From Macrostomum lignano (lineage: Eukaryota), in assembly GCA_002269645.1 (NCBI GenBank), contig NIVC01001921.1, positions 62,001 to 126,000 of the forward strand: a stretch of 64,000 nt of DNA. The letters are read 5' to 3'. Of the stretch, positions 327 to 63,425 are shown piece by piece. How positions within the stretch are numbered: position 1 is the stretch's first letter; every line of letters starts with the position of its first letter. The translations under genes and the position numbers were made by a program. Under the pieces are notes generated by a model. The model did not search any database. It saw only the letters and a list, made by a program, of their open reading frames with translations, and was not told where the DNA came from.

Positions 327-1058
327 AGCCCTGTCCAAAGCAGGCCGTCGTTGAGGACAGTCGCTACTGCGTGTTCATGCAGCGCGTCAGCAACTCGGTT
401 CTGTTCAACCGGACGTGGGCTGAGTACGAGAGCGGCTTCGGCAACTCAGAGAATTGGTGGATGGGTGAGTCATGAGCAGAGCTGGTGATGGGTGATAGGT
501 GAGTCATGAGCAGAGTTGGTGATGGTGATGGTGAGTCATGAGCAGAGCTGGTGATGGGTGAGTCATGAGCAGAGCTGGTGATGGGTGAGTCATGATTGAT
601 GTACTGGACAAGTCACCCTGACCTCTCCAGGTCTCCGGTCCCTCCACGCTCTCACCGCAAGCGGATCCGAAAAGCTGAGGGTGGAGATGACCTCCTGGGA
701 CAATGTCAGCTACTTCTGCGAGCACCCGAACTTCATGGTGCAGAGCCAGCTCACCAACTATACTCTGACGGTGGCACCGTTTCTCAGCGATCGCTGCAGC
801 GTCAATTACGATGCGATGATTTACCACTCAGGCATGCAGTTCTCCACTTTGGACGCTGACAATGACGCTGCATCAAGTGTGCATTGCTCCCGCGAGAGAG
901 GCGGCGGTGGCTGGTGGTTCAAGAGATGCGTGTTGCCGAACCCGACAGGGATCTACTCGAATGTGTCCATCCACCGCAGGCAGAACATGGTCTGGAAAGT
1001 AGAATCTGTTGACATTCCGTTAAAAAGTATCAAGCTAATGGTCAGCGCCACTCCATGA
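327..1058 (+). CDS. Fibrinogen C-terminal domain (FReD; ficolin/angiopoietin/tenascin-like) protein, last two exons; 5' exons lie upstream of the window
   Basis: Exons 327-464 (tttcag|AGCCC ... TGGATGG|gtgagt) and 631-1058 (ctccag|GTCTC ... TGA), joined in phase 1. They give CVFMQRVSNSVLFNRTWAEYESGFGNSENWWMGLRSLHALT..LRVEM..HSGMQFSTLDADND..C..GGGWWFKRC..NPTG, the canonical FReD motifs. AATAAA at 1253-1258. An alternative acceptor at 343 is possible. Confidence 0.92.
465..595 (+). repeat. ~27-bp minisatellite (gtgagtcatgagcagagctggtgatgg)n
   Basis: About 4-5 copies filling most of a 166-bp FReD intron. Confidence 0.9.
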
Positions 1059-1844: not shown

Positions 1845-2177
1845 TGGTAGTCCTTGATTTCAAATTTTTGCACTTCTGACTTCAAAGTGAAGAAAATAGC
1901 AAAATCCGAAACACACAAGAAAACGTCCTGTCGCAAAGCAGAATGCCAGTTTCCATGACAATCGGTTGGCCGAGATTCCTCAATGTATTTTCGCTGGTGC
2001 CAATCGGTGCAAAAGTAGCAATCAGGAATTTGCTAATGAAAATACTGGCAGGCCGACCGAGTCTCTGCAACCATCCACGTCAGGGCTGCTAAACGGCGCA
2101 GGTGAGATAATTAGACCTATGCTGCTGCTGGGGACTATTTAACAGTGGGGATTCGATCTATGAAATATGGTGGGGGG

Positions 2178-15237
<13,060 letters not shown>

Positions 15238-15344
15238 CTGGATTTTGAGGTGGAGATAAAGGCTGATTTTCAGGGCTTATTGAAAATGGGATTTTGTACG
15301 AGCTATATTACTGGAAAACGTCAATAATCTTCGTACGTAGCTCA

Positions 15345-18980: not shown

Positions 18981-19510
18981 CCAGTGCTATCTCCAGCGCT
19001 TAGTCCCCAATCGCATATGAATCGGTGAGGGATTAATCAACATAGGAGTAAGCTGGCTTAAGAAGCTGAGAAAGGCATAGAAAGTGCTCAAAGCGCTGGA
19101 GAATCTGTGTCCCATTCAATTAGCCGAGCGACTGCCTTCCGGGGCTGGAGATGGGAGAGGAAAAGGGAGGCCCCGGAGCTGCCTCATCTGGCCCCGCCTT
19201 TCCCAATATCCTGCCTCTGTACGATGCGAGCTCTCTGTGCTCCGTGGTGAGGGGTTCTCAGGCGCTGAGCACTCCGGGGTTTCCGCACGACCGGCCGGGC
19301 TGCTCGAGAGATTCGGCCGGGTTTCCTTTGTAAGCCGGGGAAGTTCCCTTTAGTCCCGAGTTCGAATCGACTCCCCAAAAATTAGGGGACGAACTGCGAC
19401 AGTTGAGGTTAGTCGTTAATCCTTCGCTGATTTCAGGCATTTAAATCCTTCTGAACTCACTTGTTTTAGCGCTGTAAATCGTTAATCCTTCGTATGTACT
19501 GTACTGTATC

Positions 19511-21450
19511 GGATTGTAGCCTAGTGGGGGTTGTAGCCTAGTAGGGGTTGCAGCCTAGTGGGGGTTGCAGCCTAGTGGGGGTTGTAGCCTAGTGGGGGTT
19601 GTAGCCTAGTGGGGGTTGCAGCCTAGTGGGGGTTGTAGCCTAGTGGGGGTTTTAGCCTAGTGGGGGTTGTAGCCTAGTAGGGGTAGCAGACTAGTGGGGG
19701 TTGTAGCTTAGTGGGGGTTGTAGCCTAGTGGTGTTTGTAGTCTAGTGGGGGTTGTAGCCTAGTGGGGGTTGTAGCCTAGTGGGGGTTGTAGCCTAGTGGG
19801 GGTTGTAGCCTAGTGGGGGTTATAGCCTAGTGGGGGTTGCAGCCTAGTGGGGGTTGTAGCCTAGTGGGGGTTTTAGCCTAGTGGGGGTTGTAGCCTAGTG
19901 GGGGTTGTACGAGTAGCCTAGTGGGGGTTGCAGCCTAGTGGGGGTTGCAGCTTAGTGGGGGTTGTAGCCTAATGGGGGTTGTAGCCTAATGGGGGGTTGT
20001 AGCCTAGTGGGGGTTGTAGCCTAGTGGGGGTTGTAGCCTAGTGGGGGTTGTAGCCTAGTGGGGGTTGTAGCCTAGTGGGGGTTGTAGCCTAGTGGGGGTT
20101 GCAGCCTAGTGGGGGTTGCAGCCTAGTGGGGGTTGTAGCCTAGTGGGGGTTGCAGCCTAGTGGGGGTTGTAGCCTAGTGGGGGTTTTAGCCTAGTGGGGT
20201 TGTAGCCTAGTGGGGGTTGTACGAGTAGCCTAGTGGGGGTTGCAGCCTAGTGGGGGTTGCAGCTTAGTGGGGGTTGTAGCCTAGTGGGGGGTTGTAGCCT
20301 AATGGGGGGTTGTAGCCTAGTGGGGGTTGCAGCCTAGTGGTGGTTATAGCCTAGTGGGGGTTTTAGCCTAGTGGGGGTTGTAGCCTAGTGGGGGTTGCAG
20401 CCTAGTGGGGGTTGTAGCCTAGTGGGGGGTTGCAGCCTAGTGGGGGTTGTAGCCTAGTGGGGGTTGCAGCCTAGTGGGGGTTGTAGCCTAGTGGGGGTTT
20501 TAGCCTAGTGGGGGTTGTAGACTAGTGGGGGTTGTACGAGTAGCCTAGTGGGGGTTGCAGCCTAGTGGGGGTTGTAGCCTAGTGGGGGTTGCAGCCTAGT
20601 GGGGGTTGTAGCCTAGTGGGGGTTGTAGCCTAGTGGGGGTTGTACGAGTAGCCTAGTGGGGGTTGCAGCCTAGTGGGGGTTGTAGCCTAGTGGGGGTTGT
20701 AGCCTAGTGGGGGTTGTAGCCTAGTGGGGGTTGTAGCCTAGTGGGGGTTGTAGCCTAGTGGGGGTTGTAGCCTAGTGGGGGTTGTAGCCTAGTGGGGGTT
20801 GTAGCCTAGTGGGGGTTGTAGCCTAGTGGGGGTTGTAGCCTAGTGGGGGTTGTAGCCTAGTGGGGGTTGTAGCCTAGTGGGGGTTGTAGCCTAGTGGGGG
20901 TTGTAGCCTAGTGGGGGTTGTAGCCTAGTGGGGGTTATAGCCTAGTGGGGGTTTTAGCCTAGTGGGGGTTGCAGCCTAGTGGGGTTTGTACGAGTAGCCT
21001 AGTGGGGGTTGCAGCCTAGTGGTGGTTATAGCCTAGTGGGGGCTGTAGCCTAGTGGGGGTTGTAGCCTAGTGGGGGTTGTAGCCTAGTGGGGGTTGTAGC
21101 CTAGTGGGGGTTGCAGACTAGTGGGGGTTGCAGACTAGTGGGGGTTGTAGCCTAGTGGGGGTTGTAGCCTAGTGGGGGTTTTAGCCTAGTGGGGGTTGCA
21201 GCCTAGTGGGGGTTGTACGAGTAGCCTAGTGGGGGTTGCAGCCTAGTGGGGGTTGCAGCTTAGTGGGGGGTTGTAGCCTAGTGGGGGGTTGTAGCCTAGT
21301 GGGGGGTTGTAGCCTAGTGGGGCGTTGTAGCCTAGTGGGGGGTTGTAGCCTAGTGGGGGGTTGTAGCCTAGTGGGGCGTTGTAGCCTAGTGGGGGGTTGT
21401 AGCCTAATGGGGGGTTGTAGCCTAATGGGGGGTTGTATCCTAGTGGGGGG
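19511..21450 (+). repeat. 18-bp minisatellite (gttgtagcctagtggggg)n, unit contains a Pol III A-box
   Basis: About 107 copies; the TAGCCTAGTGG core matches TRGCNNAGYGG. Confidence 0.96.
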
Positions 21451-21765
21451 ACTATTGGGGGCCCCACTCCGATGTTAAAGCGTCGAACTCTCGACTTGAT
21501 GGTCGGGGGTTCGATTCCAGATCCCACTGAAACAAGTTATGTGCTTGAGTAAGACACTTAAATCTGCATCGCTTCAGTTCACCCAGCTGTAAAATGGGTG
21601 CCAGCATTAGCTGGGGTAATTGAGGGTGTGTGGCGACCCTCCAGTCCTTGGACTGAACAGCCGTACGCAGCCTTCAGATGCGCCGCGCAATAGCTGCGGC
21701 TGAGCTGTCGGTTGCACATCTGGCTCATTTGGGGCAGGTGTAATCCTATTATATTATTTATTATC
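19511..21765 (+). mobile_element. tRNA-derived CORE-like SINE (family 2) split by amplification of its own A-box
   Basis: Starts GGATTGTAGCCTAGTGG at 19511 and resumes GTTAAAGCG at 21474. B-box GGTTCGATTCC at 21508-21518. CORE-like gtgcttgagtaagacacttaa..cttcagttcacccagctgtaaaatggg at 21541-21598. AT-rich tail at about 21747-21764. Confidence 0.8.
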
Positions 21766-21770
21766 ATGCA

Positions 21771-22258
21771 CTGTAAGTACTGTATGTACTGTATTTACTG
21801 TATGTACTGTATGTAACTGTATGTAACTGTATGTACTGTATGTACTGCATGTACTGTATGTACTGTATGTACTATATGTACTATATGTACTGTATGTGAT
21901 GTATGTACTGTATGTACTGTATGTAACTGTATGTAACTGTATGTAACTGTATGTACTGCATGTACTGTATGTACTGTATGTACTGTATGTACTGTATGTA
22001 ACTGTATGTAACTGTATGTAACTGTATGTAACTGTATGTAACTGTATGTAACTGTATGTACTGCATGTACTGTATGTACTGTATGTACTGCATGTACTGT
22101 ATGTACTGTATGTACTGTATGTACTATATGTACTGTATGTAACTGTATGTAACTGTATGTACTGTATGTAACTGTATGTACTGTATGTACTATATGTACT
22201 GTATGTAACTGTATGTAACTATATGTACTGTATGTGATGTATGTACTGTATGTACTGC
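21771..22258. repeat. 10-bp minisatellite (actgtatgta/actgtatgt)n
   Basis: Directly follows the SINE tail. Confidence 0.93.
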
Positions 22259-34189: not shown

Positions 34190-36485
<2,296 letters not shown>

Positions 36486-46824: not shown

Positions 46825-47546
46825 GTGTACATGGAAATCTCTCTCATTGGGCAAGCGCCGCCATGTTGTGTACATAGAATCTCTCTCATTGGACAGGCGT
46901 TGATGTACATAGAATCTCTCTCATTGGACAGGCGTTGATGTACATAGAATCTCTCTCATTGGACAGGCGTTGATGTACATAGAATCTCTCTCATTGGACA
47001 GGCGTTGATGTACATAGAATCTCTCTCATTGGACAGGCGTTGATGTACATAGAATCTCTCTCATTGGACAGGCGTTGATGTACATAGAATCTCTCTCATT
47101 GGACAGGCGTTGATGTACATAGAATCTCTCTCATTGGACAGGCGTTGATGTACATAGAATCTCTCTCATTGGACAGGCGTTGATGTACATAGAGATCTCT
47201 CATTGGACAGGCGTTGATGTACATAGAATCTCTCTCATTGGACAGGCGTTGATGTACATAGAATCTCTCTCATTGGACAGGCGTTGATGTACATAGAATC
47301 TCTCTCATTGGACAGGCGTTGATGTACATAGAATCTCTCTCATTGGACAGGCGTTGATGTACATAGAATCTCTCTCATTGGACAGGCGTTGATGTACATA
47401 GAATCTCTCTCATTGGACAGGCGTTGATGTACATAGAATCTCTCTCATTGGACAGGCGTTGATGTACATAGAATCTCTCTCATTGGACAGGCGTTGATGT
47501 ACATTGAAATCTCTCTTATTGGGGCGGGCGTTGATGTGCATAGAAA
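46825..47546. repeat. 35-bp minisatellite (gatgtacatagaatctctctcattggacaggcgtt)n, left half of the LTR-interrupted array
   Basis: About 20 copies. Confidence 0.95.
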
Positions 47547-50115
47547 TGTTGTACTCGCGGGCTGCGATCTCGTCTAGCCCGGTCGTTTTGTTTCCCCGGG
47601 GTAGCGGGTTCGGTGCGGGACTGCCCCGGGCGCGCGGTGGAGGGATGGACGGAGGACGAACGACTGGCGCTCCTCGAGGCGGATGGCCACTCCGAGGGGA
47701 AGAGGAAGAGATGCGACCCGGGGCGCACAGGCACTCCTTGGTCGCGGAAGGCTCGGGGTACTTCCGCGGTCAGCGGAGCGGATAGCCACTCAGAGCCGGC
47801 CCGGGAGTCACCGAGGTGAATGTGAAACGAGGTGAATGTGAAGGATTGGCCGGGGCGTACAGACACTCCGGGCCAATCAAGAGATACGAGGTGATGGATT
47901 AGCTGGGGCGTACAGACACTCCAAGCCAATCGAAGAGTGCAGGTGAGCAAGGGGGTGAGTAGGTGAAGCGATGAGGCGGCGAGGATGGAGGGACTTGACT
48001 TGACTTAGCTGCAGGGGGCGTCCGGCGAATGCAGCGAGGAGGCGGAGGAGACCGCCCATTCCGCTAGCCCCTGGCGACCAACGACTTCCGTTGAAGTGGT
48101 GTCGCTCAGGGGGACCCGTCGGTCTCGCCTGCAGCGCGGTCCTCCTCACCGACGGTGGGGAAGAAATCAGCTCGTCCGGTGTCCCTGAGGTACCGGGCGA
48201 GCAGCGGGATGCTCTCGGGCCTGCAAACGTCGGAGCGAACCGGGTTTGGCCCGAGGTGAGTAAGCCTGGCCCTGGTGAAAACCGGGCAGTGGCAGATAAA
48301 ATGCTCGGCGTTTTCACTGCCTGAGCGGCAGAAGGGGCACCGCTCCTCGGGTACTTGGCCCTGAAGGAAACGATGGTGAGAGAAGCAGCCATGCCCGGAG
48401 AGGGCCATGCTAACTGCTCTGAGATCTCTGCGGTTGAGCCTGAGGAGGGCTCTACGCAGGAGAGGAGAGGGGCAGGGGACGGCAGCACGGGATTGCCTGC
48501 AATTCCGGGTGTCGTGCCACCTGCGGAGATGCTCGGAGTCAGCCCAGCGCTTAACGCGGGAGTTGATCACCGAGGCGGGGATGGAGGCCCCAGCAGCGCG
48601 CCGGCGGAGCCAGCCTTGGCCAGCAGGTCAGCGCGCTCGTTGCCGAGGAGGCCGGCGTGGCCCGGGATCCATCTGAGCTCCACTTGGTTGCCTAGCGCAA
48701 GCCCGTTGAGCTGGGTGTTGCAGTCCAGGACGGACCTGGAGCTGGCGGTGCTGCGGCAGAGGGCCCGAAGGGCAGCTTGGCTGTCAGAGTGAAAAATAAA
48801 TTTCCGGCCGCTAAGCTGCCTTCGGCGCAGCTCTGCCGCGCAGGAGCTGATGGCAAGCACCTCGCTCTGAAAAACACTGGAGTTGAGCCCAGTGTGCTGG
48901 GAGTAGCTCCACACCACTTCTCCCTTAAAGAAGACGCAAGCTCCGAAGCCTGAACGACCATGCCTCATAGAGCCGTCAGTGTAACAGTGGACTTCAGAAT
49001 CGCTCCAGCTGTCACTCGCCTCGTGTCGAGGCTGAATGGTGACCTTATACCTTTGGCTCAGGAGAAGGGTGGCTGGGATCGAGTCCGTGAGGATGTTGAG
49101 CCCGCCACACTCCTCGAGAGCCTTGAGGCAGAGGTCAGAGTGCGGGATAAGCGACCGCTTCTTAAAGGCCCGCACTTTCTTGAAGGCCACCCCAGCATCC
49201 AGAAGACGCCGGGTGCTCTTCGCCGCCTCTCCTTTGATATAAATATCCAAAGGAGGGGCACAGAGGAAGGCATTCATGCCTTCAAAAGGAGTAGAGGGTG
49301 GAGCTCCCATAGTCATGCGGCAGGCTCTGCCCTGGATTTTGTAGAGAGCGTCGAGGTTGCTCTTGACGCTCAGGCCGCTAGCCCACACGAGGCTGGCGTA
49401 ACTGATCGAGGGGCGGATGATGGCAGTGTAAATCCACCACAGCTTCCTGGGGGTGAGCCCCCAGGTGGTGCCCATGGCGCGCCTGATCTGAGCCAGGCGC
49501 GGAGGAGGATGGAGGGAAGACACGTGCGGAGAGCCCCAAAAACGCGAACGCAACCCGAATAAACGTAATTTAAGCTCACCGGGCGGGGTCAAACCGACTC
49601 ATGCAACGCAGTTTATTTGGCCGTAGTAACTGTTCTGGCAGCTCGGAGACGGCGGGTGGCACGGATTAGCTTGCTACGAAGTGTTCCGATAGTTTACTGG
49701 GCTCGTGCCGTTTTGTACTTTTATCATAGTTTTCTTACTCAGTTGCTGGTGTAGCTCTAACCGCAAAAACCAAGCCGCGTGCCACCGGCCGGCTCCAAGC
49801 CAGCTAATAGATAGTATGCCAAAAAATGGGGGAGTGGGCCAAACCGGCCTGAGCGCAAATACTCACACAACAGAACCCCGCGAGCACCCCACCCTAGCCC
49901 AGCCAATCAAAACATGCGCTGGGTAAGGCTTTACGAACGGGGGGGTAGAAAAGCGAGGGTCTGCCGGCCCAGCCAGCCAATCAGAGCACACGCCGGCTGC
50001 CTAAAACCAAAGCCGGCTGAACCAACTCAAACCAGCTAGGCCGGCAGACCGGGCGGTTTGCATGCACAAAAAAAACCATGTTGATGAGAAGGTCATTGTG
50101 GCGCAGGCCACAACA
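47547..50115. mobile_element. Solo-LTR-like element (about 1045 bp after removing the nested LINE) inserted in a minisatellite
   Basis: Termini TGTTGT...ACAACA. 4-bp TSD GAAA (47543-47546 and 50116-50119) restores the empty repeat unit cata-GAAA-tctctc. Contains CCAAT boxes and AATAAA near 49556. No internal gag/pol seen. Confidence 0.75.
47994..49504 (-). mobile_element. 5'-truncated non-LTR retrotransposon (LINE; RT C-terminus + RNase H + CCHC), LOA/I/R1-group-like, frameshifted
   Basis: 13-bp TSD GAGGATGGAGGGA at 47981-47993 and 49505-49517; 3' tail (TCAAG)n. ORF2 remnant RRAMGTTWGL..WIYTAIIRPSISYASLVW, RNase H YTDGS/SVFQSEVLAI/SDSQAAL/WIPGHAG..GNERADLLAK, and CPFC..ENAEHFICHC. Frame break near 48570-48580. 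Confidence 0.93.
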
Positions 50116-50470
50116 GAAATCTCTCTCTTAGGACAGGCGTTGATGTACATTGAAATCTCTTATTGGGGCAGGCATTTATGTACATAGAAATCTCTCTCTT
50201 AGGGCAGGCGTTGATGTACATTGAAATCTCTTTCTTAGGGCAGGCGTTGATGTACATTGAAATCTCTCTCTTAGGGCAGGCGTTGATGTACATTGAAATC
50301 TCTCTCTTAGGGCAGGCGTTGATGTACATAGAAATCTCTCTCTTAGGACAGGCGTTGTGTACATACAAATCACTCTCATTGGACAGGCGTTGATGTACAT
50401 TGAAATCTCTCTCTTAGGGCAGGCGTTGATGTACATTGAAATCTCTCTCTTAGGGCAGGCGTTGTGTACA
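50116..50470. repeat. 36-bp minisatellite (gatgtacattgaaatctctctcttagggcaggcgtt)n, right half of the LTR-interrupted array
   Basis: About 10 copies. Confidence 0.93.
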
Positions 50471-50819
50471 TGTACTTCAGCATATCTCTTTGTCGTATTG
50501 TGTGACTTCTTAAGTGTGCACAGTATAATAAATTGTTCTTATTGACTTGACTGTCAATTTCTTCATTTGAGCAGTGTGAGCCGTCCTCTTGCACCTGAGT
50601 GGCATTCAGAATAAAAAAGAATCTCGCTGTGCTGCATCTGCAGGCGCCCTTCTGAGTTATTTATATAATAGATTATTCTCATTCATACAGATTCCCCTCT
50701 CTAGATCCCTAAGGATGTCATTCCGTTTGCATTAGCTGCTGGTGTCAGGGACACAAGTTACTTTTGTGAGGCTCGTAAATGGATCGACGATTTGAATCGA
50801 CGATAGCCTCCAGCCTAGT

Positions 50820-57400: not shown

Positions 57401-60400
57401 TGCAGGACTGGGTGTGGGGTGAGGACTGGGTGTGGGCTGCAGGACTGGGTGTGGGGTGAGGACTGGGTGTGGGGTGCAGGACTGGGTGTAGGATGCAGGA
57501 CTGGGTGTGGGGCGCAAGACTGAGTGGGGGATTGTGGATTCGTGTGGGTGCAGGACTGGGTGTGGGGTGAGGACTGGGTGTGGGGTGCAGGACTGGGTGT
57601 GGGGTGAGGACTGGGTGTGGGGTGCAGGACTGGGTGTGGGATGCAGGACTGGGTGTGGGGCGCAAGACTGAGTGGGGGATTGTGGATTCGTGTGGGTGCA
57701 GGACTGGGTGTGGGGTGAGGACTGGGTGTGGGGTGCAGGACAGGGTGTGGGGTGAGGCCTGGGTGTGGGATAGCGGATTGGGTGTGAGGTGAGGACTGGG
57801 TGTGGGGTGCAGGACTGGGTGTGAGGTGAGGACTGGGTGTTGGGTGAGGACTGGGTGTGGGGCGAGGACTGGGTGTTGGGTGAGGACTGGGTGTGGGATG
57901 GAGGACTGGGTGTGGGGTGCAGGACTGGGTGTGGGATGGAGGACTGGGTGTGGGGTGAGGACTGGGTGTGGGGTGAGGACTGGGTGTGGGGTGAGGACTG
58001 GGTGTGGGGTGAGGACTGGGTGTGGGGTGAGGACTGGGTGTGGGGTGAGGACTGGGTGTGGGGTGAGGACTGGGTGTGGCGTGAGGACTGGGTGTGGGGT
58101 GAGGACTGTATGTGGCAAAGGTGGCAAGGCCAGCCCACCCCAATTCCCCACACAGTAATATTCGAGCTGAGCCAGTCCTTTGAGGTGGACTTCCTGGCGC
58201 TGTACGGCTGGGTCGGTCTGTTCAACTCCCTGCTGCTGGTGGCCTTCGCGATGTGCGACCTGAGCAAGTTGATGCGGTGGTCCACTCGCAGCACCGAGGA
58301 GATCTTCGCCATTTTTGTGGCCATCACCTTCACGGTGGAGGCGGTGAAGAGCATCTGGTACAGTGAGTTCGGGTGGTCTTTTGTGTGTTCTTTGCCATGG
58401 CTTCACCTTGTCTAATGTGCAATTGGCCTTATTGCATGTGTACTGAACTGCACATGATCCGGTGTCTAATGTGCAATCATGTATTCTATTGAATGTGTAC
58501 TGAACTGCACATGATCCGGTGTCTAATGTGCAATCATGTATTCTATTGAATGTGTACTGAACTGCACATGATCCGGTGTCTAATGTGCAATCATGTATTC
58601 TATTGAATGTGTACTGAACTGCACATGATCCGGTGTCTAATGTGCAATCATGTATTCTATTGAATGTGTACTGAACTGTACATGATCCGGTGTCTAATGT
58701 GCAATCATGTATTCTATTGAATGTGTACTGAACTGCACATGATCCGGTGTCTAATGTGCAATCATGTATTCTATTGAATGTGTACTGAACTGTACATGAT
58801 CCGGTGTCTAATGTGCAATCATGTATTCTATTGAATGTGTACTGAACTGCACATGATCCGGTGTCTAATGTGCAATCATGTATTCTATTGAATGTGTACT
58901 GAACTGTACATGATCCGGTGTCTAATGTGCAATCATGTATTCTATTGAATGTGTACTGAACTGCACATGATCCGGTGTCTAATGTGCAATCATGTATTCC
59001 ATTGAATGTGTACTGAACTGCACATGATCCGGTGTCTAATGTGCAATCATGTATTCTATTGAATGTGTACTGAACTGTACATGATCCGGTGTCTAATGTG
59101 CAATCATGTATTCTATTGAATGTGTACTGAACTGCACATGATCCGGTGTCTAATGTGCAATCATGTATTCTATTGAATGTGTACTGAACTGCACATGATC
59201 CGGTGTCTAATGTGCAATCATGTATTCTATTGAATGTGTACTGAACTGCACATGATCCGGTGTCTAATGTGCAATCATGTATTCTATTGAATGTGTACTG
59301 AACTGTACATGATCCGGTGTCTAATGTGCAATCATGTATTCTATTGAATGTGTACTGAACTGCACATGATACGGTGTCTAATGTGCAATCATGTATTCTA
59401 TTGAATGTGTACTGAACTGCACATGATCCGGTGTCTAATGTGCAATCATGTATTCTATTGAATGTGTACTGAACTGTACATGATCCGGTGTCTAATGTGC
59501 AATCATGTATTCTATTGAATGTGTACTGAACTGCACATGATCCGGTGTCTAATGTGCAATCATGTATTCCATTGAATGTGTACTGAACTGCACATGATCC
59601 GGTGTCTAATGTGCAATCATGTATTCTATTGAATGTGTACTGAACTGTACATGATCCGGTGTCTAATGTGCAATCATGTATTCTATTGAATGTGTACTGA
59701 ACTGCACATGATCCGGTGTCTAATGTGCAATCATGTATTCTATTGAATGTGTACTGAACTGCACATGATCCGGTGTCTAATGTGCAATCATGTATTCTAT
59801 TGAATGTGTACTGAACTGCACATGATCCGGTGTCTAATGTGCAATCATGTATTCTATTGAATGTGTACTGAACTGCACATGATCCGGTGTCTAATGTGCA
59901 ATCATGTATTCTATTGAATGTGTACTGAACTGCACATGATCCGGTGTCTAATGTGCAATCATGTATTCTATTGAATGTGTACTGAACTGCACATGATCCG
60001 GTTTCTAATGTGCAATCATGTATTCTATTGAATGTGTACTGAACTGCACATGATCCGGTGTCTAATGTGCAATCATGTATTCTATTGAATGTGTACTGAA
60101 CTGCACATGATCCGGTGTCTAATGTGCAATCATGTATTCTATTGAATGTGTACTGAACTGCACATGATCCGGTGTCTAATGTGCAATCATGTATTCTATT
60201 GAATGTGTACTGAACTGCACATGATCCGGTTTCTAATGTGCAATCATGTATTCTATTGAATGTGTACTGAACTGCACATGATCCGGTGTCTAATGTGCAA
60301 TCATGTATTCTATTGAATGTGTACTGAACTGCACATGATCCGGTTTCTAATGTGCAATCATGTATTCTATTGAATGTGTACTGAACTGCACATGATCCGG

Positions 60401-60847
60401 TGTCTAATGTGCAATCATGTATTCTATTGAATGTGTACTGAATTGTACATTATCCTGTCTAATAGGCACTAATGTGTCTAAAAATTACTTTTGAGAATTT
60501 TTGCAGAAAATATCTGTTTTACACATTTTTAGCATATTAGATCTACGAAAGCGAGATATTTGCCAGCGGGAGAAAAACAGAAGTAGCAATTTCAACCAAT
60601 CGTAAAGGAATTAATTAAGCTGCGTTAATCTGCGAGCGCATCTGTCGGTCAGATCCCGACTGAATCTTAGATTGGGCGGCCAGCAACAGATTCTGGGCAC
60701 ATCTGGGCTTCCATCTGTCTCAGAAAGGCAAAAAATTATGAGCACTCACGGGCCCGCCTTGCCGTGCGGGATGGGGTGGCGCTGTGGCTGCGCGGGAATT
60801 CTTCATCTCTAAGAAATTCATTTTCTACGCTGTGACTCAAAGCGGTC

Positions 60848-60904
<57 letters not shown>

Positions 60905-63425
60905 CTAAGACAGACAGACAGACAGACAATAATCAAATAGGCTACCCTATTGCCTATTTACAATCAGCATTTCAGACTTACTACTGCGACCCCTCGGTAG
61001 TTCCGACGGCCTCGAGGCCAACTTCATGGGGCAGCAACGCGTCTTCCGACGAGCAACCGTCAGCAACCGTCTGCCAGCGGGACAGCAGCATCCTGTACCT
61101 GCTGCTCTGCCTGGGCACCGTGTTTCTGGCCATGTACCTGCTCAACTTTACCGAGACGTGAGTTATCTTCGGCCATTATCTAAGACTGTACATTTAGGGA
61201 TCACGTGACCATGTCTAAGACTGTAAATTTAGGGATCACGTGACCATGTCTAAGACTGTACATTTAGAGATCACGTGACCATGTTTAAGACTGTACATTT
61301 AGGGATCACGTGACCATGTCTAAGACTGTAAATTTTGGGATCACGTGACCATGTTTAAGACTGTACATTTAGGGATCACGTGACCATGTTTAAGACTGTA
61401 CATTTAGGGATCACGTGACCATGTTTAAGACTGGAAGAGTAATATTTCTCGAAAAGCAGAATATTAGGAGCCACGTGAAAGCCTATTAATTAACCTGACT
61501 AAATATTCAGGCCTTACCTGAACCGGGCAAAACGCGAAGCGATGGCGGACTTCTCAATACCCGTGGCAGTCTTGGCGATGTCTGTTCTGGGCACCTGGCT
61601 TTTTAAAGATGTAGCTTGTAAGATGTTCGATTGTATGACATAATTTTGCTGCAGTACCAACGCTTTGCTCTCTAGGATGTGTAGTGAAACACCAAGTACT
61701 CACTATCAACGCCAGGAAACTGAATTTATACCCCGGAAAAGCTTCGTCACTCTTTGGGTTCTTATTGTCCGCCCTCACACTGAGAGATTCCACCGGTCAC
61801 TTCTAAAATTCCATATCTGTCACTCCTTAGATTCAATTGTCACTTCTTAGATCCAAATTGTCACTCCTTAGGTTCAAACTAGCACTCTTAGATTCAAATT
61901 GTTACTAATCTAATTTCAATTGTCACTCCTTAGGTTCAAATTGTCATCCCTAGAAGTTTAATTGTCACTCCTTGTAATTTTAATTTTCCCTCGTTCGACT
62001 CAAAATTGTCACTCCATCGACTCAAAATTGTCACTCCATCGACTCAAAATTGTCACTCCATCGACTCAAAATTGTCACTCCATCGACTCAAAATTGTCAC
62101 TCCATCGACTCAAAATTGTCACTCCATCGACTCAAAATTGTCACTCCATCGACTCAAAATTGTCACTCCATCGACTCAAAATTGTCACTCCATCGACTCA
62201 AAATTGTCACTCCATCGACTCAAAATTGTCACTCCATCGACTCAAAATTGTCACTCCATCAACTCAAAATTGTCACTCCATCGACTCAAAATTGTCACTC
62301 CATTGACTCAAAATTGTCACTCCATCGACTCAAAATTGTCACTCCATCGACTCAAAATTGTCACTCCATTGACTCAAAATTGTCTCTCCATCGACTCAAA
62401 ATTGTCACTCCATCGACTCAAAATTGTCACTCCATCGACTCAAAATTGTCACTCCATCGACTCAAAATTGTCACCACTTCGACTCAAAATTGTCACCACT
62501 TCGACTCAAAATTGTCACCACTTCGACGTGCTCACAGTGGAAGGCTTCACCTGTCAGCCGAACGTACGTCTCGAGCTCACGGTTGCTAGGCAGTTGTCAG
62601 GGCCCGGCATTGCGGCGGCCCTGGGCCTGGCGGTGCCGCTGGCTGTGCTGTGCTTCATGGACCAGAGCATCAGCTCGGCCACCGTCAACTGCCCTGCCAA
62701 CAGGTGAGCCGGATGGAGTGGGACATGCTGTCTCCACTGCTCGTAACCCAATACTCTTCTGCTGTTGCTGTCGATGGCGGGTCCATTGATTTGGCTCCAC
62801 TGAGGTATAACTTTGACTTTTTTTATCGAACCTCTGCCCACTTTGCCTTCTTTTGTCTGCAAATTCTCTTTGACTTTTTACATTCCCCCCCCTATCTTTC
62901 ACTCTGTAAGAAGCCTCTTGACATCGATCTCTGTTCGCTCTCTCATGTCTGCCTCTCTCATCTGCCTTCTCCTGTCTCTCCTTTCTGTTCTCTCTCCCCT
63001 CTCCTCTCACCCTACTTCCTTCTCCATTCTCCCTTCTCGCCTCTCCCCTCTCTTCTCTCCTTCTCTATTCTCTTCCCTCTCCTCTCTTTTCTCTGCCATC
63101 TCTCCTTAGCTCCTATTCTTCCCCATTTTCATCTCTCTTTCCCTCACCTTCCTCATTATTAGATAAATGTCATTGGGTGATGCAATTACCCTGGTATTTC
63201 AATCATTACATGAAACCCATTACAAAATTCTCAACCGCTGGCCAGGCTGCAGAAGGGCTCGGCCTACCACTGGGACCTGCTGGTGATGGGCCTCATCAAC
63301 GGCTGCCTGTCACTGTGCGGCCTGCCGTGGCTGCTCGGCTCGCTGCCCCACTCGCCGCTGCACGTGACGGCGCTGGCCGACATTGAGGAGCGAATCGACC
63401 CCGGCCAGCAGCTCGTGCGGCAGAC
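51456..63425 (+). CDS. SLC4A11: SLC4 family anion/borate transporter, SLC4A11 (BTR1/NaBC1)-like; 14 exons, 3' end beyond the window
   Basis: Exons 51456-51687, 51766-51803, 52207-52495 (donor uncertain), 53631-53715, 54237-54360, 54442-54651, 55976-56057, 56137-56259, 56599-56712, 58156-58362, 60968-61157, 61511-61617, 62538-62703, 63246-63425; phases are consistent. Motifs: [119 protein letters not shown]. Confidence 0.93.
51850..52112. repeat. 12-14-bp degenerate minisatellite (gggggcactgtt)n
   Basis: SLC4 intron 2. Confidence 0.88.
52485..52790. repeat. ~27-bp minisatellite (gatggagctgtgagtgaggctgggcta-like)
   Basis: Starts at the end of SLC4 exon 3. Confidence 0.88.
53200..53542. repeat. 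24-bp minisatellite (gagtgaggtgggtgtcggggctgg)n
   Basis: About 14 copies. Confidence 0.92.
54678..55850. repeat. 33-bp minisatellite (atgtacataggagaaccattgactctgcccaca)n
   Basis: About 35 copies. Confidence 0.95.
56310..56545. repeat. ~50-bp minisatellite containing cagccaatcagag
   Basis: 4-5 copies. Confidence 0.85.
56725..58110. repeat. ~20-bp G/T-rich minisatellite (gactgggtgtggggtgcag / gactgggtgtggggtgag)n
   Basis: Fills a SLC4 intron. Confidence 0.94.
58410..60460. repeat. 57-bp minisatellite, about 35 near-identical copies
   Basis: tactgaactg recurs at 58441, 58498 and onward; no spacers. Confidence 0.96.
60850..60928. repeat. Short (GACA)n with a CACTAA interruption
   Basis: Direct inspection. 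Confidence 0.9.
61178..61433. repeat. 35-bp minisatellite with TCACGTGAC
   Basis: About 7 copies. Confidence 0.93.
61995..62527. repeat. 22-bp minisatellite (cgactcaaaattgtcactccat)n
   Basis: About 24 copies ending 10 bp before an acceptor. Confidence 0.95.

What the first reader, a model, noticed from the sequence alone, without database searches (positions are those of the whole stretch)
19511..21765. A 1.9-kb minisatellite made of ~107 copies of a Pol III A-box, grown inside a SINE
Seen: removing 19528-21473 rejoins GGATTGTAGCCTAGTG(G) to GTTAAAGCGTCG..GGTTCGATTCC, a normal tRNA-like head followed by a CORE-like domain and an AT tail. The 18-bp unit is the SINE's first 18 nt including TAGCCTAGTGG. 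A short filler (actattgggggccccactccgat) marks the right junction, and a tgtacgagtagcc variant recurs every 100-350 bp. Each unit adds a G5 run, giving a dense G4-prone strand. Inference: this catches a minisatellite's origin from a promoter element. An A-box polymer with one B-box might act as a TFIIIC landing or insulator site between DPP promoters, or give variable-length Pol III transcripts.
Basis: partly seen in the sequence, partly recalled or inferred. Interest (0 to 1): 0.72.

Follow-up and report, generated by a model that had tools for sequence, protein, structure and literature searches.

The report
Minisatellite grown from a SINE's head
One copy of a small mobile element (a tRNA-derived, MIR-like SINE) in the flatworm Macrostomum lignano has had its first 17 bases copied about 111 times in place; this is a clear but ordinary case of a transposon-derived minisatellite in a genome full of such arrays.

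Summary
Window 19511-21450 is a head-to-tail array of 111 units. The modal unit is 17 bp (TTGTAGCCTAGTGGGGG), not 18. Deleting the array and a 23-nt filler restores a 308-bp element. That element has an A box, a B box 33 nt downstream, a weak tRNA-like cloverleaf, a CORE/MIR-like central domain and an AT-rich tail. The unit equals SINE nt 1-17 with one A>G change, and only the first unit keeps the A.

The motif ACTGTATGT lies directly on both sides of the element and fixes the insertion boundaries.

A multi-unit block carrying a 6-nt insertion variant recurs, 15 units in a row are identical, and the ends of the array are the most variable. This pattern points to in-situ growth by slippage or unequal exchange.

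The window is Macrostomum lignano: its exons are 100% identical to M. lignano proteins. Forty-five unrelated arrays cover 47% of the window, so the expansion reflects the genome region and not the A box.

The functional ideas are not supported:
- Only one B box is present.
- Only one DPP-IV-like gene was found.
- Seven T4 terminators interrupt the array.

I could not obtain the SINE family consensus, because no M. lignano genome is available to these tools.

Verdict: a new member of a known kind, of low to moderate interest.

The parts
19492..19510 (+). 5' flank: about two units of the ACTGTATGT motif (GTATGTACTGTACTGTATC), directly before the SINE. A target-site-duplication-like match to the 3' flank.
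   Evidence: Rotations of ATGTACTGT occur at 19492-19509 and from 21766 on, and otherwise only once in the window, at 58105.
19511..19527 (+). SINE nt 1-17 and first array unit, GGATTGTAGCCTAGTGG. It is the only unit that keeps A at position 3. The A box TAGCCTAGTGG is at 19517-19527.
   Evidence: It aligns with the A-box/D-arm region of MIR and of metagenomic relatives.
19528..21450 (+). Units 2-111 of the minisatellite (consensus TTGTAGCCTAGTGGGGG). It contains six 23-24-bp units with a 6-nt insertion, seven units with a T4 run, and a run of 15 identical units at 20681-20935.
   Evidence: TRF; unit table; variant map, A-box and T4 counts; block structure.
21451..21474 (+). Junction filler ACTATTGGGGGCCCCACTCCGAT, plus an ambiguous G at 21474. 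The first 11 nt are a degenerate partial unit. CCCCACT is the reverse complement of the unit's AGTGGGG.
   Evidence: The hairpin is no more stable than shuffles (z = -1.04).
21475..21539 (+). Rest of the tRNA-like head: D-arm remainder TTAAAGCG, an anticodon-like CTC loop, and the B box GGTTCGATTCC at 21508-21518.
   Evidence: B-box scan; ARAGORN on the rejoined head; alignment to MIR.
21540..21601 (+). CORE-like central domain: TGTGCTTGAGTAAGACACTTAA...CAGTTCACCCAGCTGTAAAATGGG.
   Evidence: A profile built only from metagenomic relatives hits 21493-21601 at E = 1.5e-13, the only significant hit in the window. The region is colinear with the MIR CORE.
21602..21765 (+). Family-specific 3' body and the AT-rich tail TATTATATTATTTATTATC (21747-21765).
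   Evidence: No other copy exists in the window.
21766..22257 (+). (ATGTACTGT)n array of about 53 units, starting directly after the SINE tail. It carries the same motif as the 5' flank.
   Evidence: TRF; motif scan.

Best explanation
A single full-length copy of a tRNA-derived, CORE-type (MIR-like) SINE inserted into or next to an (ATGTACTGT)n tract. The site lies about 4 kb upstream of the putative first coding exon of a DPP-IV-like gene in Macrostomum lignano.

After insertion, the first 17 nt (GGATTGTAGCCTAGTGG, which contains the A box) were duplicated in tandem. An A>G change at position 3 created the G5 run. The array then grew in place to 111 units (1.94 kb) by replication slippage and unequal exchange or gene conversion involving several units at a time.

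The growth split the A box from the B box and so most likely disabled this copy as a Pol III unit. It is a neutral by-product of the very high rate of minisatellite formation in this genome region. It is not an element selected for its A boxes.

Shown: the array, its colinear position inside the element, the restored SINE, the boundaries and the block structure. Inferred: the order of events, the mechanism and neutrality.
For: 1. The array and its units are confirmed.
2. Removing 19528-21474 restores an element that is colinear from A box to CORE with MIR (score 55; shuffles 17.4 +/- 2.2, maximum 26). It is also colinear with metagenomic relatives.
3. The rejoined head is called tRNA-like by ARAGORN at 90% of threshold. 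None of 500 shuffles is called, and the actual sequence is not called.
4. The same 9-mer motif abuts both ends of the element and occurs almost nowhere else, which fixes its boundaries at 19510/19511 and 21765/21766.
5. Only the edge unit keeps the presumed ancestral GGA. Variant units concentrate at both ends, and 15 identical units sit in the centre.
6. A block [TTTAG | TGTAG | TGTACGAG-insertion | TGCAG | TGCAGCTTAG ...] recurs three times in full and three times in part, which shows multi-unit duplications.
7. Seven T4 runs inside the array make retroposition of an already expanded Pol III transcript unlikely.
8. Forty-five unrelated arrays cover 47% of the window. M. lignano is reported to have 15% simple and tandem repeats (PMC5730564).
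9. Minisatellites derived from SINEs, and satellites derived from tRNA-related regions, are documented (PMC9659126).
Against: - No other copy of this SINE could be obtained. There is none in the window. No same-family copy turned up in metagenome, viral or prokaryote collections. The protein route found nothing. The family's true 5' end is therefore inferred from relatives and flanks, not from a consensus.
- The progenitor has 0-1 nt of microhomology at a 17-nt offset, so simple slippage between direct repeats does not explain the first duplication.
- The array starts exactly at SINE nt 1. In-situ slippage does not predict this.
- The 23-nt filler is unexplained.
- The array length and the G5/G6 differences could partly be long-read assembly error.
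Confidence: 0.8

Rival explanations
1. The head repeats arose during retroposition. The reverse transcriptase reached the 5' end of the SINE RNA and repeatedly switched back to about position 17, or 5' junction repair made the first duplications. The insertion therefore arrived with a short head array that later expanded.
For: The array starts exactly at SINE nt 1. A second array starts exactly at the SINE's 3' end. There is no flanking microhomology for slippage. The filler contains an inverted copy of part of the unit, as a template switch would leave.
Against: 111 units cannot come from one event. The block structure and the homogenised centre show later in-situ turnover in any case. The exact start is one post-hoc coincidence. 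The filler hairpin is no more stable than shuffles.
Confidence: 0.08
2. The array is an independent satellite family, and a 5'-truncated SINE happened to land next to it or was joined to it by rearrangement.
For: The 23-nt filler at the junction could be a rearrangement scar. The window is full of arrays, and mobile elements do sit inside them.
Against: The unit supplies exactly the missing head. It is a perfect A box in the right register and completes AGTGG|TTAAAGCG as in MIR. The A-box consensus occurs only once elsewhere in 128 kb of sequence counting both strands. The left edge of the array coincides with the insertion boundary marked by the flank motif.
Confidence: 0.02
3. The A-box polymer is functional. 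It could be a TFIIIC or TFIIIB landing pad, an insulator upstream of the DPP-IV-like gene, or a source of Pol III transcripts of varying length.
For: 75 perfect A boxes and one B box are present. In human MIRs, transcription persists in vitro after B-box mutation, so the A box has some autonomous core-promoter role (PMC5381342). The array lies upstream of a gene. A long-loop G4 is predicted.
Against: - High-affinity TFIIIC binding depends on the B box (established knowledge; the key role of the B box is confirmed in PMC5381342), and there is only one.
- The last perfect A box is 115 nt from the B box.
- T4 terminators occur in 7 units.
- No second DPP promoter was found.
- 44 neighbouring arrays have unrelated units, so no special explanation is needed.
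- There are no conservation or expression data.
Confidence: 0.03
4. The array is real, but its length, unit order and G5/G6 variants are partly artefacts of assembling long noisy reads across a 2-kb low-complexity tract.
For: Published M. lignano assemblies rely on PacBio reads and are described as difficult because of simple repeats (PMC5730564). Homopolymer-length variants cluster at one end.
Against: The substitution variants are structured: recurrent multi-unit blocks with identical variants. Random error would not produce that. Both junctions are unique sequence.
Confidence: 0.1

Closest known systems
TE-derived minisatellites (human Alu-derived minisatellites; mouse B1-derived VNTR family), as reviewed in PMC9659126
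   Same: A short internal segment of a SINE copy is amplified in tandem at one locus. The array stays embedded colinearly in the element and contains interspersed variant units.
   Different: Here the segment is the extreme 5' end and includes the whole A box. There is no flanking direct repeat in the progenitor. The host is a flatworm, and the SINE is tRNA/CORE-type rather than 7SL-derived.
Satellites derived from the tRNA-related region of SINE-like elements (Hydromantes Hy/Pol III; Xenopus Satellite 1), listed in PMC9659126
   Same: The tandem repeat unit carries Pol III promoter sequence of tRNA-like origin.
   Different: As far as I recall, those are genome-wide satellite families whose longer monomers keep both promoter boxes. 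This is one local array of 17-bp units with the A box only, and it is still attached to its parent element.
CORE-SINEs (MIR/Ther-1, OR2, BflSINE1, BivaCORE-SINEs, Styp of Stylophora)
   Same: A tRNA-derived head with A and B boxes, followed by a CORE-like domain (...AAGACACTTAA...CAGTT..CCCAGCTGTAAAATGGG), then a family-specific 3' part and an AT-rich tail.
   Different: The 3' part matches nothing I could reach, and the partner LINE is unknown. Flatworms are not mentioned among CORE-SINE hosts in PMC5804259. This copy is interrupted by the array.
Classical hypervariable G-rich minisatellites (Jeffreys-type VNTRs)
   Same: A 10-60-bp unit, kb-scale length, a G-rich strand, interspersed variant repeats, and more variable ends.
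   Different: Length polymorphism and meiotic instability are untested. The unit has a known single-copy progenitor.

Membership tests
tRNA-derived SINE (type 2 Pol III internal promoter) | A box TRGCNNAGTGG near the 5' end | tested here: met
   TAGCCTAGTGG at 19517-19527, which is nt 7-17 of the element. 75 of the 111 units match.
tRNA-derived SINE (type 2 Pol III internal promoter) | B box GGTTCGANNCC about 30-60 nt downstream of the A box | tested here: met
   GGTTCGATTCC at 21508-21518. The gap is 33 nt in the rejoined element. In the actual locus it is 115 nt from the last perfect A box and 1.98 kb from the first.
tRNA-derived SINE (type 2 Pol III internal promoter) | tRNA-like cloverleaf in the head | tested here: inconclusive
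   ARAGORN at default settings and Rfam find nothing in the window. On the rejoined head ARAGORN calls tRNA-Glu(CTC)-like at 90% of threshold, with 0 of 500 shuffles called. The head is degenerate, as is usual for SINEs.
tRNA-derived SINE (type 2 Pol III internal promoter) | Target-site duplication and A/T-rich 3' tail | tested here: met
   The AT-rich tail is at 21747-21765. Both flanks carry ACTGTATGT-type sequence, an imperfect match of about 17 nt. The exact duplication cannot be defined because the 3' flank is itself an array.
tRNA-derived SINE (type 2 Pol III internal promoter) | Dispersed multi-copy family in the host genome, with a consensus starting with the same head | not testable with these tools
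   There is one copy in the window. No M. lignano genome is in the searchable collections, and only distant relatives (about 72% identity) were found in metagenomes.
CORE-SINE superfamily | CORE central domain directly after the tRNA-related head | tested here: met
   Colinear local alignment to the MIR consensus scores 55, against shuffles of 17.4 +/- 2.2. Independently, a profile built from 8 metagenomic elements with a tRNA head and a CORE-like domain hits 21493-21601 at E = 1.5e-13. No curated library (Dfam, Repbase, SINEBase) was available.
CORE-SINE superfamily | 3' tail shared with a partner LINE (L2 or CR1 type in known members) | not tested
   The 3' part has no similarity to the retroelement fragment at 47.9-49.6 kb or to anything else in the window. 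No LINE library was available.
Minisatellite (VNTR) | Head-to-tail array of 10-100-bp units reaching 0.5 kb or more, with interspersed variant units | tested here: met
   17 bp x 111 = 1.94 kb. 41% of units equal the consensus, the mean is 1.16 edits per unit, and there is recurrent block structure.
Minisatellite (VNTR) | Length polymorphism between alleles or individuals | not testable with these tools
   Only one sequence of the locus is available.
TE-derived minisatellite born by slippage between short direct repeats | The progenitor unit is flanked by direct repeats one period apart | tested here: not met
   In the rejoined sequence C|GGATTGTAGCCTAGTGG|TTAAAGCG, bases 17 nt apart share 0-1 nt at the unit borders (read). 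A 15-nt GG...GG slippage followed by G-run growth remains possible.
Canonical G-quadruplex motif | Four G3+ tracts with loops of 1-7 nt | tested here: not met
   There are 0 matches because the loops are 12 nt, and 21 matches when loops up to 12 nt are allowed. The mean G4Hunter score is 1.08. ViennaRNA's G-quadruplex model still predicts a long-loop G4.
TFIIIC-bound ETC or insulator site | One or more B boxes bound by TFIIIC without Pol III | not testable with these tools
   By sequence there is one B box for 75 A boxes. Binding needs ChIP.

The most novel reading that the evidence does not exclude
Retroposition junctions may seed minisatellites in M. lignano. The 17-bp array begins exactly at nt 1 of the SINE, and the (ATGTACTGT)n array begins exactly at its 3' end. 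If tandem duplications made during target-primed reverse transcription or junction repair routinely start arrays that the genome then expands, this locus would be a dated, polarised snapshot of the process behind part of the genome's 15% tandem-repeat load.
Probability: 0.08. Interest if true: 0.55.

Novelty: new member of a known kind. Interest (0 to 1): 0.25.

Why it matters
The locus shows a minisatellite whose single-copy progenitor is known. The parent 17-mer, the polarity of the array and its internal block duplications can all be read directly. This makes it a useful marker for studying how arrays are born and turn over in M. lignano, a regeneration model whose genome is hard to assemble because of such repeats. 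It also points to a CORE-type SINE in a flatworm, a phylum not mentioned among CORE-SINE hosts in the one survey I checked (PMC5804259). It does not reveal a new kind of element or function.

Tried and rejected
- Rfam at gathering and permissive thresholds, and ARAGORN at default settings, found no tRNA or SINE-related hit in the real sequence. The only weak hits were miRNA-model matches to the (ATGTACTGT)n array, which are low-complexity artefacts.
- blastn and nhmmer found no other copy of the SINE body in the window.
- The single metagenome scan with a B-box + CORE pattern gave 40 loci. Eleven are SINE-like elements with a tRNA head and a CORE-like domain. The rest are ordinary tRNA genes with chance downstream matches. 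None belongs to the same family.
- Viral and prokaryote genome collections contain no array dimer and no intact head junction.
- I translated the minus-strand ORF across the SINE, hoping to find M. lignano gene models containing an intact head (REFDALTTRLQ). The search found no homologue.
- Supplements with SINE consensus sequences are not held, so I used a MIR consensus from memory as a lead only.
- I searched for a second DPP gene with Pfam on 20 ORFs to the right of the array and with tblastn of the window's own DPP exons. Nothing was found.
- The filler hairpin is not significant.
- I rejected retroposition of a pre-expanded transcript because T4 terminators sit inside the array.

Full report
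**What is there**

Window 19511-21450 is a head-to-tail array.
- TRF reports 19514-21449, period 17, 111 copies, 90% matches, score 2988.
- My own tokenisation gives 111 units. Forty-six are exactly TGTAGCCTAGTGGGGGT, 17 are the TGCAG variant, and 6-7 are the TTTAG variant, which creates a T4 run.
- Six units are 23-24 bp long because of a 6-nt insertion (TGTACGAGTAGCC...). They start at 19906, 20218, 20533, 20641, 20986 and 21214.
- Units of 18-19 bp with G6 cluster at 21254-21434.
Everything else in the description is in the sequence, including the 23-nt filler at 21451-21473.

**The element around the array**

Joining 19511-19527 (GGATTGTAGCCTAGTGG) to 21475-21765 gives a 308-bp element with these features:
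- an A box (TAGCCTAGTGG) at nt 7-17;
- a B box (GGTTCGATTCC) 33 nt downstream;
- a central domain, ...CTTGAGTAAGACACTTAA...CAGTTCACCCAGCTGTAAAATGGG;
- a unique 3' part and an AT-rich tail.

ARAGORN and Rfam find nothing in the real sequence. On the rejoined head ARAGORN calls a tRNA-Glu(CTC)-like cloverleaf at 90% of its threshold. None of 500 shuffles is called at that setting, and the interrupted sequence is not called either.

The rejoined element aligns colinearly from A box to CORE with the MIR consensus. The local score is 55, against 17.4 +/- 2.2 (maximum 26) for shuffles. The interrupted sequence aligns only from the B box onward. The junction AGTGG|TTAAAGC mirrors MIR's AGTGGTTAAGAGC.

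For independent real data I used my one metagenome scan. It returned 40 loci, eleven of them elements with a tRNA-like head followed by the same central domain. A profile built from eight of these, with no sequence from this window, hits the window once, at 21493-21601 with E = 1.5e-13.

**Boundaries**

Rotations of ATGTACTGT occur at 19492-19509, directly before GGATTG. They occur again from 21766, directly after the tail, where they form a 53-unit array. Elsewhere in the 64 kb they occur only once. The SINE is therefore a discrete insertion from 19511 to 21765. The 17-bp array begins at its first nucleotide and lies inside it.

**Origin of the unit**

The unit equals SINE nt 1-17 repeated, with position 3 changed from A to G. 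This change makes the G5 run (GTGG + GGG). Only the first unit keeps GGA.

In the rejoined sequence, bases 17 nt apart share at most one nucleotide at the unit borders. The classical model of slippage between flanking direct repeats therefore does not explain the first duplication. A 15-nt GG...GG slip followed by G-run growth is a less economical alternative.

**Evidence for growth in place**

- A block of units [TTTAG | TGTAG | TGTACGAG-insertion | TGCAG | TGCAGCTTAG | ...] recurs in full at about 19872, 20185 and 21180, and in part three more times.
- Fifteen consecutive units at 20681-20935 are identical.
- Variant units concentrate toward both ends.
- Overall, 41% of units equal the consensus, and the mean is 1.16 edits per unit.

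This is the signature of unequal exchange or conversion involving several units at once, with ends that are less homogenised. Seven T4 runs lie inside the array. T4 or longer is the canonical Pol III terminator (PMC5381342), so an already expanded Pol III transcript is an unlikely retroposition template.

**Host and context**

- Exons at 2138-2850 on the minus strand are 100% identical to two Macrostomum lignano Peptidase_S9 protein fragments. A retroelement ORF also has its closest named relatives in M. lignano.
- A DPP-IV-like gene lies on the minus strand. Its Peptidase_S9 exons are at 2138-3219 and 5834-6229, and its DPPIV_N exons are at 7014-7235 and 7641-8138. A possible membrane-anchor first exon is at 14965-15276.
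- The array is therefore about 4 kb upstream of that gene. I found no second DPP gene.
- Forty-five arrays with unrelated units cover 47.2% of the window. Apart from (AGAC)n tracts and one split array, the sequences between arrays are unique. M. lignano is reported to carry 15% simple and tandem repeats (PMC5730564).

**Interpretation**

The simplest reading is that a region that readily forms minisatellites amplified whatever sequence it hit, in this case a SINE head.

The functional ideas are weak:
- There is one B box for 75 perfect A boxes.
- The last perfect A box ends 115 nt before the B box.
- Terminators interrupt the array.

One caveat applies. Human MIRs retain some transcription in vitro without a B box (PMC5381342), so short A-box-driven transcripts are not excluded.

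The G4 claim is half right. No canonical motif exists, because the loops are 12 nt, and the mean G4Hunter score is 1.08. ViennaRNA's G-quadruplex model nevertheless predicts a long-loop quadruplex.

**Comparison with known cases and novelty**

Minisatellites derived from SINEs (Alu, B1), and satellites derived from tRNA-related regions (Hydromantes Hy/Pol III, Xenopus Satellite 1), are documented (PMC9659126). CORE-SINEs are known from vertebrates, lancelet, echinoderms, molluscs, arthropods and cnidarians. Flatworms are not mentioned in the survey I checked (PMC5804259). This is a new member of a known kind. Its only unusual feature is that the array starts exactly at the element's first nucleotide.

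**Main gap**

No M. lignano genome is available to these tools. I could not test the family consensus, other arrays of this unit, or the homeologous 'empty' state.

Noticed in passing
window 1-64000: The window is Macrostomum lignano; its exons are 100% identical to UniRef M. lignano proteins. It is 47.2% tandem repeat: 45 arrays with unrelated units of 4-93 bp, about one every 1.4 kb. The sequence between arrays is unique.
   Followed up: partly
window 2138-8138 (-), possibly to 15276: A DPP-IV-like gene. Peptidase_S9 exons are at 2138-3219 and 5834-6229, and DPPIV_N exons are at 7014-7235 and 7641-8138. A candidate transmembrane first exon is at 14965-15276. Its introns hold kb-scale minisatellites, for example 3661-5775 and 9197-10341.
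   Followed up: partly
window 600-1055 (+): An exon encoding a fibrinogen C-terminal domain (Pfam Fibrinogen_C, E = 2.8e-20), next to the 3' end of the DPP-like gene.
   Followed up: no
window 46865-50471: A 2.6-kb retroelement fragment on the minus strand carries an RNase H ORF at 48567-49592. Its relatives carry RVT_1 + RNase_H. It sits between two related 35/36-bp arrays (46865-47545 and 50116-50471, about 76% identical), as if it inserted into and split one array. This parallels the SINE flanked by ACTGTATGT on both sides.
   Followed up: partly
window 12357-14638 and 34192-36485: Two (AGAC)n tracts of about 2.3 kb each lie 21.8 kb apart and align at about 92-93% identity. A short third tract is at 60847-60928.
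   Followed up: no
window 19413-19426 and 19479-19492: The 14-mer TCGTTAATCCTTCG occurs twice, 66 bp apart, just upstream of the SINE. TAATCCT also occurs at the SINE's 3' end (21741-21747). This may be chance or a nascent repeat.
   Followed up: no
window 21442-21468: At the right junction, the unit's AGTGGGG and the filler's CCCCACT form a 7-bp inverted repeat. This would fit a template-switch scar, but the hairpin is no more stable than shuffles (z = -1.04).
   Followed up: yes
loci L004, L007, L016, L038, L033; L002, L012, L018, L020, L022, L026: Metagenome contigs (Ga00998xx, Ga0100405, Ga0126343 and JACSEG010...) carry SINE-like elements with different tRNA-like heads and the same CORE-like domain (...AAG[AG]CACTTAAC...CCCAGGTGTATAAATGG). 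They probably come from eukaryotic host DNA in those samples.
   Followed up: partly
window 21786-21995: Several Rfam miRNA models (mir-3327, mir-297 and others) give weak sub-threshold hits inside the (ATGTACTGT)n array. These are low-complexity artefacts.
   Followed up: yes
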